From Polymyxa betae A26-41 (lineage: Eukaryota > Protista > Endomyxa: Phytomyxea), in the NCBI GenBank assembly GCA_003693705.1, contig RBZT01000098.1:1-40136 (forward strand): a stretch of DNA of 40,136 nt. The letters are read 5' to 3'. The notes below the pieces were generated by a model. That model saw only the letters and a program-made list of their open reading frames with translations. It was not told where the DNA came from and did not search any database. This document shows positions 28,796-38,679 of this stretch, piece after piece; position 1 is the first letter of the stretch, and each line of letters starts with the position of its first letter. The position numbers were made by a program, and so were the translations under genes.

Positions 28796-30688
28796 ATGAC
28801 GATCCGCCCTGACGATGTCGCCGTCAAGATCGCTGATTCGCGACGTCGGCATACCTTCATGCTGCAAGGCGTCGGAAAGGATTTCACTGTCGACATTAAG
28901 GTCGGTTTCAGGCCAAGCGGTGTGATCGGATTACCGCCTTAATCGTCGACGATTTAGTATACCCCCATGAAGGTGCTTGGATCGGGAGCTTATGGTATAG
29001 TGGCAGCTGCATTTGATAACGATCTGGAAAGAAAAGTCGCAATTAAACAGGTTTGTCTTTTTTTCTCGCCTTATATCTGGTGTTAGGTTTTGCTTCAATC
29101 ATTTTGGTTAATCTGCTGATTGGTTCAGTCGATATTTGACCACTTTCTGCGGTTGTCTAAATTCATTCTTGACCGTAGCTGTAGGTTGCCAATGTCTTTG
29201 AAGACGAAACCGACGCCCTCCGTGTTTTACGAGAGGTTAAATTGCTGCGTCACCTTCGACACCCGAATATTGTGACATTGTATGATATTGAGCGACCGCT
29301 CACTATCGAACAGTTCCGCGATCTGTATCTAATTATGGAGCATATGGAAGCTGATCTGCATAAGTGAGTCTGGTCTTCTGTGGTCTGCAAGTTGCTTACA
29401 CAAGTTCAGAATTATTCATTCGAAACCGCGACAGTTGACTGAAGATCACATCCGCTACATTCTTGTACAGTTATTAAGTGGTGTGAAGCATATGCATTCA
29501 GCTGGTGTTATTCACCGCGATCTTGTATGGATCGTTTCAATGAATGCATCAACATGGGCTAAGCGTTTCGGTTGCTTAGAAACCGTCGAACATTCTATTA
29601 AACTCCAGCTGTGATTTGCGAATATGCGACCTTGGTATTAGACTTGACTCCATCTCTCCTCTCGAAATTCATCGCTTTTTAGGCCTTTCCCGTGGGCTCG
29701 AATCCAGTAGCGGCAAGAAAACACGATTGACAGAATATGGTAACTTCTCATTTATTACTTTGGATTTTGGTTTTGATTTGCCAAATCATCTGTGAGAGCT
29801 GTTTGCGTTTGTAGTCTTTCCGTGTTACCTTTATTATCGTGTAACTTTCTGCTACGTTTAGTTGTTACACGGTGGTATCGGGCTCCAGAAATTTTATGCT
29901 CATCGAACTATTCCTACCCTGTCGACATGTAGGCTCAATACGACATTTGTCTGCATTTTTTAACATCGACTTAGGTGGGCGATTGGCTGCATTTTTGCAG
30001 AGATGCTGCGTTGCGAAGCTCTGTTTCCTGGTGAGAATTCTGTTGATATGTTAAATCGAATTCATAAGGTACGACAACAGCATGATGAGGGTTTTTTATC
30101 ATTAATCTTGTCGATGTAGGTTTTCGGATCCAAGGAAATGAACGCTTTACGCGCTCATGCAACGCATCAGCGAGCGCACCAGTTTTTGGCAGACATGAAA
30201 TCATGCGACCCCATTCCGCTTGACCATGTTCGTAGCCGATGTGTTTCTAAGGCCCCGTTCTCCATATTCTGACCTTTGAATCTTTAGGTATGCTTTGGAG
30301 CTAGTCAGGAGGCACTGTCATTACTCGGCCGCATGCTTCGTATCTTGCCCGAAGAGCGCATCTCTATTGACCAAGCTTTAAACGATCCATTCCTGCAAAG
30401 ATTCAATTCCTGTCATATCGAAGCCGACGTAAGATTCGGTTGAATCCGCTTTCTCCATGCTGTTAATAGCATCACTATTTTCAGGTGGAGGTATTTCGAT
30501 TTGATTTTGAGAAAGAGGCTAAAGGCAAAGATACCATTCGTCGATTGATGTTCAACGAGATCCTAGATTTATCTGCCAAGAATTCTACAGTAAACCGTTC
30601 AGATGATGATGAATCAGGCATGGCTGGAGTCGACAATGTATGCGCTTCAATGCAAAATCTATCTGTTCGTCGCTCACGTTCTGGTTAA
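28796..30688 (+). CDS. Mitogen-activated protein kinase (TEY type), 11 exons
   Basis: The spliced translation has [56 protein letters not shown] and [12 protein letters not shown]. Ten GT-AG introns keep the frame. Confidence 0.95.
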
Positions 30689-34048: not shown

Positions 34049-34508
34049 ACCAATCTCTATCTTCAATGTCTTAAATTCTCTCTATACTTGTTGGTCTGGT
34101 GCATTATCTAAATAATATCACCGCTTGGGCTCATGAATGTTTTCAGTGCAAATCCATCAGCGGCATTTTTGGCAATCTGGTTTCACGTGCGTTGAATGAA
34201 GTCGAATAAGACTGGCTGCTTTTTTTTGCTGTTTATCTAATCATAAGCAGAAATCAGGAGGATCCTTGGTGGAGCTTTCAACACATTTTGATTGTTCCTG
34301 GTCAACTTTGTTTGCTTTGTTAAAGCAAGAATTGCCCAAGCTGTGGGCCGCAATTAACAGCTCGAAAGCTTCCAGTGAAGCTATGATGGCAGTATTGTGT
34401 CTGACAACCGGATAGGAGGAACCCACCATCAATTGGAATCGGATCGAATCGATTGGTATGACCCGGCGACTGTCATCTTTATCACAATGTCGCCAACATT
34501 CCAGAAAT

Positions 34509-34593
34509 GTGTTGGTGGCCGAGTTGGTCTAAGGCGCTAGCTTAAGGCGCTAGTTTCGTTCGCGGAGCGCGGGTTCGAATCCCGTCCGACACA
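34509..34593 (+). tRNA. tRNA-Leu(AAG)
   Basis: Acceptor GTGTTGG/CCGACAC, D-arm GCCGAGTTGGTCTAAGGC, anticodon arm CTAGC-TTAAGGC-GCTAG, long variable arm, GGTTCGAATCCC, downstream T-run. Confidence 0.93.
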
Positions 34594-34599
34594 GTCTTT

Positions 34600-36825: not shown

Positions 36826-38679
36826 TTATTCAGAATCCGGTACAATATCGCCTTCTTCAATCTCGTCGTTGTCCTCTGCGGAGGTAGAAGTAACAGCGGA
36901 ATCAGGTCGGACGGCGGTTGATGAAACTTCGACGCTGTCTGTTGCCTGAACGGCATCTATCTCATCATCGCGAATCTCTCCATCTTCGTAAACATCGTTA
37001 TCCGAATGCCAATCCCCATCTCGACTCACAACATATATTTGATCGGTCTACAACATTGAATAAACCCTAAACCCTAACCAATTCGCAATAGTCACGGACC
37101 TGTGGTGGCGACCTTTGCATTTCGTCGTGGTGACCCGACTTGCAATCATGATTGTGATCCGCGGCTTTTACATGATGATCGCCCTAAAATTTCGATCAAA
37201 ACCCTAAACCCTAATTGTCGGCCCCTGTGGTACCAATTGTTGCCTTTCGGCTTCATTATTATCCGTTTTCCAATCATCATTTGAACGCGCGCACTACAAT
37301 ACTCATAAGAACTTGAGCCCTTATAGAAGACCGTCACCGACCTGAGGCAGCCACCATGCCATTTCGGCTTCGTCAACTTCTTCATTCTTCATGGATCCCT
37401 AAGACACAACAGTGAGCTCTAAACCCTAGCCCGACGCATCCACCGACTTGTTGTATCCGAAACTGCCTTTCAAAATCCTCATACGTCGTCATAGCACCAA
37501 ATGGACACTTCGGATACGCTCGACGATGCACCTATGTTTTATGTTGACAACCCTAAACCCTAACCAAAAGGCGCAGATTACCTCACGCTGTAAACGTCGC
37601 AATTCCAATAACTCGTGATCCAGGCTCCAGTGGTAATCGTTGTTCTTCATATAAACTGGATGATGGGCCTACGAAATTCGATTAAAACCCTAAACCCTAG
37701 ACAAGGCAACCGCTACGTGAGTTGGCAGCCGCCGTTTCATTCTTGCAATCTTTCGGAAAGCCAGACTTTGTGTCGGGTCCGATTCCTCCAACAAGTCGTC
37801 ATCGCTTTCTTCGGACTCCGGCTGGGAGTCCGTCGCCGCCTCAAGATCGCTCCAATCCAGGTCCGGGTCCGGATGCGGACTCGACGCCCGCAACGACCGC
37901 TGTTCGTGCGTGAAATCCGGCTGGGCGAACAGCTCATCGAACCCGACGCCGAGATAATTGGGCGAATTCGTCGGAGGTCGTAGATCTGCAAGGAACTCAT
38001 TCAATCTCGTAGTGATTTCCATAGCTGAGGGAGTTGAGAGATGCAGCGGATCTCGGTTACGTCCAGAACCTGAGCGAGCTTCATTTGGAGGATCAACGGG
38101 TGTCTGTTGAAGGAGAGGCGGTGCTGATACACGACGAGCTGGTGTATCCGGCACGGCCGGGAACAATCGCGAAAACGACTCGGTGAGAGACGGGCTTGGC
38201 GGTGACCGCGGCCCATCCAATTGTGCCTCCGCCTGGCTATCCGGACTGTAATACGGCGAACTATCCCACTCATCATCAGCGCCATCCGAAGGTGTGATCG
38301 TCAGGGTGATATTCGGATCGGGGTGCGGCGGGAATCCGCTACAGTAGCACCGGGCTCGAGGGATAAGATCCGACAAGCTGTCCCATAGAATGCCGAGATC
38401 GCCATACAGATTGACATTGCAAGGCGAGTCTTCGGAGTCCCAACCGCGGCGAGCTGGTGGAGAATCGGAGTAGATTGGAGGCGGAGTTAAGGGCGGCAGA
38501 GTCGAACTTGAAGAGCGCGAAGATGATATTGAGAATGATGGGTCCGAGCGCGGGCTTGCGAGCGCATGCGGTGGGCTTGGCGCGGAAATAGGGCTGCGAG
38601 AGCGGGAGTTGCGTTCGGCTTGAGCGTCCCAGCAAACGAACGACGACCCATTCTCATCGAGATCAGAGATGTCGCTCAT
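36826..38679 (-). CDS. Largely disordered Ser/Pro/Asp-rich protein (~518 aa), 7 exons
   Basis: Exons 38679-37717, 37668-37582, 37531-37448, 37398-37342, 37293-37234, 37183-37100 and 37047-36826 are all multiples of 3 with no internal stops. The start codon is uncertain because the ORF is open to 38829. Confidence 0.8.
37061..37700 (-). repeat. Cluster of interstitial telomeric motifs (TTTAGGG), one per intron
   Basis: AAACCCTAAACCCTA-type motifs at 37061-37079, 37198-37214, 37420-37429 (single unit plus a degenerate one), 37549-37565 and 37684-37700. Confidence 0.9.

What the first reader, a model, noticed from the sequence alone, without database searches (positions are those of the whole stretch)
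37048..37716. A gene with six uniform phase-0 mini-introns, five carrying a positioned telomeric TAGGGTTT motif
Seen: splicing the 36826-38679 gene requires six introns, 37716-37669 (48 nt), 37581-37532 (50), 37447-37399 (49), 37341-37294 (48), 37233-37184 (50) and 37099-37048 (52). All are GT..TAG and phase 0. Four contain TAGGGTTTAGGG, intron 3 has TAGGGTTTAGAG, and intron 4 has a degenerate TAAGGG at the same offset. The motif starts ~18-23 nt after the donor, just upstream of a branch-point-like site. Two acceptors themselves read TTAG|GG. The motif is absent from the exons, and no dimer is seen in the ten MAPK introns. Known: TTTAGGG is a plant/protist telomere repeat and telo-box, UAGGGU is the high-affinity hnRNP A1 site, and telomere-like repeats in introns have been described in a few protists such as Eimeria. 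Inference: this may be a class of telomere-repeat mini-introns. They could arise by telomerase- or repair-mediated insertion, by duplication of an exon-intron unit (introns 1 and 5 share 3' ends; 3, 4 and 6 share GTC[GC]GTG starts), or be kept as binding sites for a telomere/telo-box protein or splicing factor.
Basis: partly seen in the sequence, partly recalled or inferred. Interest (0 to 1): 0.85.

Follow-up and report, generated by a model that had tools for sequence, protein, structure and literature searches.

The report
Duplicated mini-introns carrying telomere-like repeats
Six tiny, really spliced introns in one gene of a beet-root parasite look alike because one exon-plus-intron block carrying a short telomere-like repeat was copied in tandem; such repeats are scattered through this genome's introns and gene spacers in both directions, and this gene's copies are kept unusually intact.

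Summary
Six GT..AG, phase-0 introns of 48-52 nt lie at the stated coordinates. Assembled contigs of two public runs skip exactly these six stretches. Four introns carry TAGGGTTTAGGG, one has a single mismatch, and one has a decayed copy at the same offset.

The uniform size, phase and motif offset are best explained by tandem duplication of a 105-137 bp exon-plus-intron module. The exons are related to each other, and one 41-nt repeat crosses an exon-intron border.

The genome is almost surely the unannotated Polymyxa betae draft. It holds about 1,400 short telomere-like dimers with the same T2-4AG3 unit mix as its contig-end arrays. They have unique flanks. They occur in introns in both orientations, two of them validated by protein homology, and in at least one intergenic site. 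This argues against an introner family and against a general sense-strand RNA signal.

One thing remains unexplained. The motif is 83% identical between the paralogous introns, against 42% for intron flanks and 44% for exons. That suggests selection or regeneration of the motif.

Unchecked first-reader notes of this scan report the same motif in introns elsewhere in this genome. The closest known cases are intron-enriched interstitial telomeric sequences in Caenorhabditis elegans and plant telo-boxes.

The parts
36826..38679 (-). Protein-coding gene of 7 exons (518 codons plus stop). It is lineage-specific: no Pfam domain, no detectable homologue and no paralogue in the genome.
   Evidence: Reading frame. 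Transcript-like contigs of X1 and X2. No Pfam hit for exon 1 or exon 7. No homologue of exon 1. Only a self-match in the own genome.
37669..37716 (-). Intron 1, 48 nt, phase 0
   Evidence: contigs skip 48 nt
37532..37581 (-). Intron 2, 50 nt, phase 0
37399..37447 (-). Intron 3, 49 nt, phase 0
37294..37341 (-). Intron 4, 48 nt, phase 0. Its motif is decayed, yet it is still spliced.
37184..37233 (-). Intron 5, 50 nt, phase 0. Its donor lies 9 nt upstream of the position homologous to the donor of intron 6.
37048..37099 (-). Intron 6, 52 nt, phase 0
37688..37699 (-). Telomere-like dimer TAGGGTTTAGGG in intron 1
37551..37562 (-). Telomere-like dimer in intron 2. A 19-nt stretch around it is identical to that of intron 6.
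   Evidence: (family D1)
37417..37428 (-). Dimer with one mismatch (TAGGGTTTAGAG) in intron 3
37312..37323 (-). Decayed copy of the dimer in intron 4 (TAAGGGCTCAAG), at the homologous alignment columns
37202..37213 (-). Telomere-like dimer in intron 5
37065..37076 (-). Telomere-like dimer in intron 6
36961..37803 (-). Array of six diverged exon-plus-intron modules (105-137 bp each) plus the head of exon 7. This is the duplicated region.
   Evidence: Repeat families D3-D7. Exon-exon similarity 430 against 326 +/- 13. Alignment A3. Peptide repeat.

Best explanation
The six introns are genuine, spliced mini-introns of a lineage-specific gene. The genome is almost surely the Polymyxa betae draft (a plasmodiophorid root parasite of sugar beet). 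The introns resemble each other in length, phase and motif position because the 3' half of the gene arose by tandem duplication of one symmetric (phase 0-0) exon together with its adjoining intron. That ancestral intron already held a short interstitial telomeric sequence of about two and a half units of the organism's own T2-4AG3 telomere repeat. Each copy inherited the intron, its phase and the repeat at the same offset. One copy (intron 4) has since decayed, one (intron 3) has a single change, and one donor (intron 5) has slid by 9 nt.

Such short telomere-like dimers are a genome-wide feature. There are roughly 1,400 of them, dispersed, with unique flanks and with the same 6/7/8-nt unit mix as the arrays at contig ends. 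They lie in introns in either orientation and also in intergenic DNA. The duplication, the splicing and the genome-wide spread are shown here.

Two further points are inferred. The repeats probably originate from telomerase or telomere-templated repair. In this gene the motif appears to be kept by selection: it is far better conserved than its intron flanks or the exons. The most likely role is as a double-stranded DNA site for a telomere-repeat-binding (Myb/telo-box-type) factor, and a splicing role is less likely.
For: Splicing: contigs of X1 and X2 skip exactly the six introns, and the spliced frame is open.

Duplication:
- Exon-only pairwise local alignment scores sum to 430, against 326 +/- 13 for codon-shuffled exons (0 of 300 shuffles reach it). 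The best pairs are e5-e6 (z 5.9) and e4-e6 (z 4.6).
- At peptide level, e2-e7 has z 4.0 and e5-e7 z 3.5, with a shared [ND]-D-x-W-[HK]-[ST]-D-N-like core.
- A 41-nt, 73%-identical repeat spans the end of exon 4 plus the start of intron 4, and the end of exon 6 plus the start of intron 6 (family D4).
- Introns 1 and 5 share their 3' parts and the first codons of the next exon.
- All exons are symmetric, phase 0-0.

Genome-wide counts (observed against the reversed-pattern control):
- 7-nt-spaced dimer 558 vs 8.
- 6-nt-spaced dimer 529 vs 22.
- 8-nt-spaced dimer 318 vs 7.
- The 9-mer TTAGGGTTT 2597 vs 453.
- Trimers of the 7-nt unit only 16.
- Contig-end arrays C97:2-81, C125:10224-10341 and C649:143-308 show the same unit mix and telomere-consistent strand.

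No shared flanks: mean flank alignment score 10.3, against 10.3 for shuffled flanks.

Both orientations in introns:
- The L001 PCMT gene has a 47-nt intron with the G-strand in sense. The Pfam profile runs 46-144 | 146-171, and a 74%-identical protein is contiguous across the junction.
- The L012 short-chain dehydrogenase gene has an 84-nt intron with the C-strand in sense. The profile runs 13-104 | 107-158, and Spongospora protein P0121 runs 166 | 167 across the junction.
- The heuristic calls give 10 sense and 7 antisense.

Intergenic example: L003, between an Mpp10 gene and a Ten1-like ORF.

Constraint: pairwise identity between the six modules is 83% in the 12 motif columns, 42% in the intron flanks and 44% in the exons.
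Against: - The modules are old and diverged (about 44% exon identity in the multiple alignment). Homology of modules 1-3 is weaker than that of modules 4-7.
- Tandem Repeats Finder sees no long-period array.
- Descent of the motif from one ancestral intron is inferred, not shown. Parallel insertion at a shared hotspot would look similar.
- The genome-wide sample is small: 28 dimers outside the window, most classified only by an open-frame and codon-usage heuristic. That heuristic% of random positions intron-like.
- Only two introns elsewhere are validated by homology.
- Genome-wide, perfect dimers (about 550 above control) against one-mismatch dimers (about 384 above control) is not far from neutral birth and decay. 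Selection is therefore indicated only within this gene.
- The species assignment rests on matching contig number, assembly size and GC content to a paper.
- X1 and X2 are not on record as RNA.
Confidence: 0.7

Rival explanations
1. The motif is a selected double-stranded DNA element, a telo-box-like site for a telomere-repeat-binding Myb-type protein. It would act on transcription or chromatin of the host gene, and this role would be the reason the repeats persist in introns and promoters. This is compatible with the duplication origin. It differs from the best explanation in making function, rather than neutral insertion, the main cause of the genome-wide pattern.
For: - Orientation does not matter genome-wide.
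- The repeats occur both in introns and in at least one site upstream of an ORF (L003).
- Dimers far outnumber trimers (558 against 16).
- The motif is far better conserved than its flanks in this gene.
- The single 9-mer telo-box is 5.7-fold over its control.
Against: - No binding protein was identified here.
- Unit spacing is free (6, 7 and 8 nt are all common). That fits a telomerase product better than a fixed binding site.
- In this gene the sites lie in the 3' half, unlike plant telo-boxes, which cluster near the transcription start.
- The genome-wide ratio of perfect to one-mismatch copies is near neutral expectation.
Confidence: 0.3
2. The motif is a sense-strand RNA signal. It would be a G-triplet or UAGGG-type intronic splicing enhancer (hnRNP A1/H-like, or pairing with U1) that helps define 50-nt introns whose donors are very weak.
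For: - All five copies in this gene are in the sense orientation, 3-6 nt upstream of branch-point-like yTnAy sites.
- The donors are weak: GTAGCG, GTAATC, GTCGGT, GTACCA, GTCCGT.
- The motif is conserved.
- In L004 six same-strand clusters sit at open-frame junctions, several of them at the donor.
Against: - Elsewhere the repeat is found in introns in the antisense orientation: L012 is validated, and the heuristic gives 10 sense to 7 antisense.
- One gene in L008 has two sense and two antisense copies.
- Intron 4 has lost the motif and is still spliced.
- The ten or so neighbouring MAPK introns have equally weak donors and no motif.
- The sense orientation of all copies in this gene follows from common descent.
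Confidence: 0.12
3. The introns were each created or re-made by telomerase- or repair-mediated insertion of telomere repeats. The repeat itself offers GT and TAG, so this would be a mechanism of intron gain producing a class of telomere-repeat mini-introns.
For: - The repeat contains donor-like G|GTTAGG and acceptor-like TTTAG|G.
- Thirteen of 32 dimers are preceded by GT, and several putative introns begin GTTAGGGTTTAGGG.
- The acceptors of introns 3 and 5 read TTAG|GG.
- The unit-length mix equals that of the terminal arrays.
Against: - In this gene the real donors lie 17-23 nt upstream of the motif, in unique sequence, and the acceptors 13-19 nt downstream.
- The exon-intron borders themselves are paralogous, so the introns were copied, not made anew.
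- GT before the motif is just as common at antisense sites, where it cannot be a donor (L012, L018).
- No empty orthologous site could be examined.
Confidence: 0.08
4. The introns belong to an introner-like mobile family that spreads copies of itself into genes.
For: Introns 1 and 5, and introns 2 and 6, share sequence beyond the core motif.
Against: - Flanks of 32 dimer sites are no more alike than shuffled sequence, apart from pairs within this gene.
- The 978-bp module region has no other match in the genome.
- The similarity extends into the exons.
- At 48-52 nt there is no room for terminal repeats.
Confidence: 0.02

Closest known systems
Interstitial telomeric sequences of Caenorhabditis elegans (PMC6800518)
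   Same: These are short, partly degenerate copies of the organism's own telomere repeat, dispersed on chromosome arms. [quoted passage not shown] Here too the repeats avoid long open frames. They fall in intron-like contexts about twice as often as random positions.
   Different: Here the introns are only 45-85 nt long, so the repeat fills a quarter to 40% of the intron. The repeats are nearly all two units long. The organism is a rhizarian with a heterogeneous T2-4AG3 repeat. Within one gene the repeat is multiplied by module duplication and is conserved. Chromatin and small-RNA links could not be examined.
Short interstitial telomeric sequences inserted during double-strand break repair in mammals (PMC2246262, PMC7215372)
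   Same: A few exact telomere units flanked by unique sequence at internal sites. The unit-length mix copies that of the true telomere, as expected of a telomerase product.
   Different: In mammals insertion was shown by comparison with empty orthologous sites. The density is far higher (about one dimer per 20 kb) and the arrays are shorter.
Plant telo-box (AAACCCTA) bound by TRB Myb-like proteins (bioRxiv 10.1101/2022.11.23.517682; PMC6508855)
   Same: Same sequence, the TTTAGGG-type repeat, as short interstitial copies that work in either orientation as protein-binding sites in and near genes.
   Different: [quoted passage not shown] Here five sites lie in 3'-half introns of one gene. No binding or regulatory evidence exists for this organism.
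Tandem exon duplication of symmetric (phase 0-0) exons
   Same: Repeated, mutually similar exons of similar length, all bounded by introns of the same phase, encoding a repeated peptide. The introns are copied along with the exons.
   Different: Nothing unusual, except that the copied intron carried a telomere-like repeat, which stayed intact while the rest diverged.
Telomere-like TTTAGGG repeats in Eimeria tenella (bioRxiv 10.1101/2021.12.01.470736, citing Reid et al. 2014)
   Same: The same heptamer, abundant at internal sites of a protist genome.
   Different: In Eimeria the repeats form repeat-rich bands along the chromosomes together with CAG repeats. Here they are isolated two-unit sites.

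Membership tests
Interstitial telomeric sequence (short ITS) | Sequence equals the organism's own telomere repeat | tested here: met
   Arrays at contig ends are built of TTAGGG, TTTAGGG and TTTTAGGG units with the G-strand pointing to the contig end: C97:2-81 (minus), C125:10224-10341 (plus) and C649:143-308 (minus). The intronic motif is two such units. Caveat: the ends were seen only as pattern matches and could not be fetched.
Interstitial telomeric sequence (short ITS) | Internal location, few units, unique flanking sequence | tested here: met
   The copies lie inside a transcribed gene. There are 558 dimers but only 16 trimers. Flanks are no more alike than shuffled sequence.
Interstitial telomeric sequence (short ITS) | Arose by insertion (an empty orthologous site exists in a relative) | not testable with these tools
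   No related genome is reachable. The only close relatives found are transcript-derived proteins (P0001, P0121).
Tandem exon-intron module duplication | Exons mutually similar beyond chance | tested here: met
   Summed pairwise score 430 against 326 +/- 13, reached by 0 of 300 codon shuffles. Peptide-level z up to 4.0.
Tandem exon-intron module duplication | Similarity runs across exon-intron borders, and all borders have the same phase | tested here: met
   Repeat family D4: 41 nt at 73% identity across the borders of introns 4 and 6. All introns are phase 0. Alignment A3.
Introner / introner-like element | Many near-identical intron copies in unrelated genes, similar over their whole length | tested here: not met
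   no other copy of the module region in the genome, and no flank similarity among 32 dimer sites.
Sense-strand intronic splicing enhancer (G-run / hnRNP A1 site) | Acts as RNA, so it should lie on the transcribed strand of introns | tested here: not met
   A validated intron with the antisense copy in L012. The heuristic gives 10 sense to 7 antisense. All copies are sense in this one gene, but by descent.
Sense-strand intronic splicing enhancer (G-run / hnRNP A1 site) | Needed for, or enhances, splicing of its intron | tested here: inconclusive
   Intron 4 has a decayed motif and is spliced in the contigs. Contigs cannot show splicing efficiency.
Plant-type telo-box cis-element | Core AAACCCTA, over-represented in the genome | tested here: met
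   The 9-mer occurs 2597 times against 453 for the control.
Plant-type telo-box cis-element | Concentrated near transcription starts and bound by TRB-type Myb proteins | not tested
   There is no annotation and there are no binding data. One dimer lies just upstream of a Ten1-like ORF, but in the finding's gene the sites are in the 3' half.

The most novel reading that the evidence does not exclude
In this parasite, two-unit telomere repeats would be working parts of genes rather than repair scars. They would be kept intact by selection inside 50-nt introns, and at promoters, as sites for a telomere-repeat-binding factor that tunes transcription, chromatin or splicing. Gene-internal copies of the chromosome-end sequence would then form a regulatory layer in a rhizarian. 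A weaker variant is that telomerase-made insertions are a steady source of new intron sequence and splice sites.
Probability: 0.3. Interest if true: 0.7.

Novelty: new member of a known kind. Interest (0 to 1): 0.45.

Why it matters
Interstitial telomeric sequences enriched in introns are known from nematodes, and their origin and role are still open. This case adds a distant lineage (Rhizaria). Here the introns are so short that the repeat makes up a large part of each one. A natural experiment also exists in this gene: six old paralogous introns let the repeat's conservation (83%) be compared directly with neutral-looking flanks (42%). That makes it testable whether such repeats are merely tolerated or are used. 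It also warns annotators and later readers of this scan that the striking regularity of these introns comes from module duplication, not from a new kind of intron. The Polymyxa betae assembly has no gene annotation. The transcript-like contigs found here show that public data exist to build one.

Tried and rejected
- Two home-made gene finders, meant to give an unbiased intron set for the 217 kb in hand, failed. They missed the RNA-confirmed introns and predicted too little coding sequence, so they were dropped.
I did not try to harvest flanks by padded patterns. The genome-wide sample is therefore 28 dimers outside the window.
It was replaced by a script that derives everything from the stored files.
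- Exon 1 (321 aa) found no homologue, and exons 1 and 7 have no Pfam domain. The gene's function stays unknown.
- The joined, spliced protein was never sent to any search. Exons were searched one by one by reference. Joining was done only inside a script, to count stops.
- Intron comparison with relatives failed. The best PCMT relative (P0001) sits on a 910-nt metagenome record of unknown kind. The only dehydrogenase relative (P0121, Spongospora) comes without a contig. No Plasmodiophora gene with introns could be reached.
- Tandem Repeats Finder found only the 7-nt repeats, not the diverged 105-137-bp modules.
- ORFs of L004 gave no Pfam family, so the strand of that multi-repeat gene rests on codon statistics alone.
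- Runs X9 and X12 had no reads on the stretch, which is no test.
- The L009 amino-acid permease 'intron' was rejected. The repeat lies in a frame that stays open through it, so it may be coding.
- Literature searches found no report of telomere-like repeats in plasmodiophorid introns. The held library is incomplete, so this is not proof of novelty.
Full report
**What is there**

On the minus strand of the window a gene runs from 38679 to 36826. Removing six stretches gives an open 1557-nt frame with a single stop at the end. The stretches are 37716-37669, 37581-37532, 37447-37399, 37341-37294, 37233-37184 and 37099-37048, of 48-52 nt, all GT..TAG. Every exon length is a multiple of three, so all introns are phase 0. 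The unspliced frame has 12 stops.

TAGGGTTTAGGG occurs four times and TAGGGTTTAGAG once. All five are inside these introns, on the sense strand, 17-23 nt after the first intron base. They are the only matches in 40 kb, where 0.06 are expected by chance. Intron 4 has a decayed copy at the same alignment columns.

**Splicing is real**

Of the runs offered, X1 and X2 hold the stretch as assembled contigs. Both come from one study, and their kind is not on record. One contig in each matches all exons without a difference and skips 52, 50, 48, 49, 50 and 48 nt exactly at the predicted borders. Six precise GT-AG deletions in a contig that otherwise follows the genome into the 3' flank are what spliced RNA gives. 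Two raw RNA runs with the same species label had no read here and are no test.

**Which genome**

The assembly has 1001 contigs and 27,085,814 bases. The announcement reports no gene annotation. The identification is an inference from these numbers. The closest protein relatives found are a Spongospora subterranea protein and an unnamed metagenome protein, which fits.

**Why the six introns look alike**

The exons flanking them are related to each other.
- Pairwise local alignment scores of the exon sequences alone sum to 430, against 326 +/- 13 for codon-shuffled exons. None of 300 shuffles reaches that value. The best pairs are e5-e6 (z 5.9), e4-e6 (z 4.6) and e4-e5 (z 3.2).
- At peptide level e2, e5, e6 and e7 share a core like [ND]-D-x-W-[HK]-[ST]-D-N.
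- The repeat finder gives a 41-nt, 73%-identical pair that covers the end of exon 4 plus the start of intron 4, and the end of exon 6 plus the start of intron 6. It also gives further families in mid-exon.
- Introns 1 and 5 share their last about 20 nt and the first codons of the following exon.
- In the alignment of the six exon-plus-intron modules, the sequence ACCACAGG, which ends exon 6, lies inside intron 5. The donor of intron 5 has therefore slid 9 nt upstream.
- The upstream 876 nt of exon 1 hold no further module, and the genome holds no second copy of the region.

A tandem duplication of one symmetric exon with its intron explains the equal phase, the near-equal length and the equal motif offset without any special intron-making process.

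**The motif in the whole genome**

| Pattern | Observed | Reversed control |
|---|---|---|
| 7-nt-spaced dimer (TAGGGTTTAGGG) | 558 | 8 |
| 6-nt-spaced dimer | 529 | 22 |
| 8-nt-spaced dimer | 318 | 7 |
| 9-mer TTAGGGTTT | 2597 | 453 |
| Trimer of the 7-nt unit | 16 | 0 |
| 7-nt dimer, up to one mismatch | 1073 | 139 |

The last row gives about 384 one-mismatch copies above control, against about 550 perfect ones. That is close to what steady insertion and neutral decay would give.

Arrays at contig ends mix 6-, 7- and 8-nt units, and their G-strand points to the contig end. They are C97:2-81, C125:10224-10341 and C649:143-308. The telomere repeat of this organism therefore appears to be heterogeneous T2-4AG3, and the interstitial copies mirror it. 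This fits a telomerase or telomere-templated origin, but that origin is inferred.

**Where the other copies lie**

- The flanks of the 32 dimers in hand are no more alike than shuffled sequence (mean score 10.3 against 10.3). The only top pair on the 3' side is introns 1 and 5 of this gene. This is not a mobile or introner family.
- Dimers avoid long open frames: 28% are covered by a frame of 100 codons or more, against 61% of random positions.
- Two further introns are validated by homology.
  - In L001 a PCMT gene is interrupted between profile positions 144 and 146 by a 47-nt intron with the G-strand in sense. A 74%-identical protein runs 156 | 158 across the junction, with the split codon between.
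  - In L012 a short-chain dehydrogenase is interrupted between profile positions 104 and 107 by an 84-nt phase-0 intron with the C-strand in sense. The Spongospora protein runs 166 | 167 across it.
- A stricter open-frame and codon-usage heuristic sense and 7 antisense intron-like sites among 58 telo-box clusters outside this gene. In L008 it finds two of each orientation in one gene.
- The same heuristic% of random positions intron-like, against 29% of the clusters (p = 0.007). That is roughly a twofold enrichment, with a crude tool.
- Offsets vary. The repeat is at the very donor in several L004 junctions, in the middle in L001, and elsewhere in others.
- One dimer is intergenic, between an Mpp10 gene and a Ten1-like ORF.

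The positioned, sense-strand pattern is thus a property of this gene, inherited by descent, and not of the genome's introns.

**What remains unexplained**

Between the six modules, pairwise identity is 42% in the intron flanks and 44% in the exons, but 83% in the twelve motif columns. Four copies are perfect. At 42% flank identity, a pair keeping 12 of 12 positions by chance has a probability near 3 in 100,000. So either the motif is kept by selection, or it is renewed by some process, or it was inserted in parallel at a shared hotspot. I regard selection as the most likely of these, at about even odds.

Because orientation is free elsewhere, a double-stranded DNA site for a telomere-repeat-binding factor fits better than an RNA enhancer. 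Intron 4 shows that the motif is not essential for splicing.

**Comparison with what is known**

In C. elegans 63% of interstitial telomeric sites lie in introns, a nearly twofold enrichment, and they are almost absent from exons (PMC6800518). Mammalian short interstitial telomeric sequences are repair insertions (PMC2246262, PMC7215372). Plants use the same heptamer as the telo-box, bound by TRB proteins. Eimeria has abundant internal TTTAGGG repeats. I found no report for plasmodiophorids. One paper lists CCCTAAAA as the putative telomere motif of Plasmodiophora brassicae. The case is therefore a new member of a known kind, with an instructive twist.

**Limits**

- The spliced protein was not sent to any search.
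- First-reader notes of this scan on other pieces of the same genome report the same motif in introns, at donors, at promoters and at gene ends. They are unchecked. I saw matching examples only in my own loci.

Noticed in passing
G000 contig ends: C97:2-81 (minus), C125:10224-10341 (plus), C649:143-308 (minus): The terminal arrays mix TTAGGG, TTTAGGG and TTTTAGGG units. The telomere repeat of this organism therefore seems irregular (T2-4AG3) rather than a single heptamer. A published table lists CCCTAAAA for Plasmodiophora brassicae.
   Followed up: partly
L003:4689-6873 (G000:C1:228000-237999), dimer at L003:5013-5024: A telomere-like dimer lies between the 3' end of an Mpp10 gene (PF04006, E 1.4e-109) and a downstream same-strand ORF with a borderline match to Ten1_2, the telomere-capping CST subunit (PF15490, E 1.7e-6, 28.1 bits against a cut-off of 27).
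   Followed up: partly
L004:1-10000 (G000:C7): There are sixteen TAGGGTT cores on the minus strand against one on the plus strand. They form six clusters at junctions between open frames, and several clusters begin right at a GT donor. There are no large internal repeats, and the ORFs have no Pfam family. This may be a second multi-repeat gene that is not explained by duplication, or a subtelomeric contig.
   Followed up: partly
L008 (G000:C19:30300-40299), sites near 2558, 4029, 4986, 5541: One apparent minus-strand gene has four intron-like gaps with a telo-box, two in the sense and two in the antisense orientation.
   Followed up: partly
window:39888-39905 (+): Two TTTTAGGG units in tandem lie about 230 nt from the end of the window, which is probably the contig end.
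   Followed up: no
window:28445-28518 (+) and 34508-34594 (+): tRNA-Asp (GTC) lies just upstream of the MAPK gene. tRNA-Leu (AAG) lies next to the gene that converges on the finding's gene.
   Followed up: yes
window:37048-37716 and 28900-30500: Donor sites show almost no consensus beyond GT (GTAGCG, GTAATC, GTCGGT, GTACCA, GTCCGT in RNA-confirmed introns). How 50-nt introns are recognised in this organism is an open question in itself.
   Followed up: no
window:36500-36826 and beyond: The X1 and X2 contigs continue more than 1.5 kb past the stop codon into the neighbouring convergent gene. The two transcripts probably overlap at their 3' ends, or were merged by an unstranded assembly.
   Followed up: no
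L013:4572-4901 (+): An ORF with a Myb/SANT-like DNA-binding domain (PF12776, E 7.6e-7) lies 121 nt from a telomere-like dimer. This is probably coincidence.
   Followed up: no
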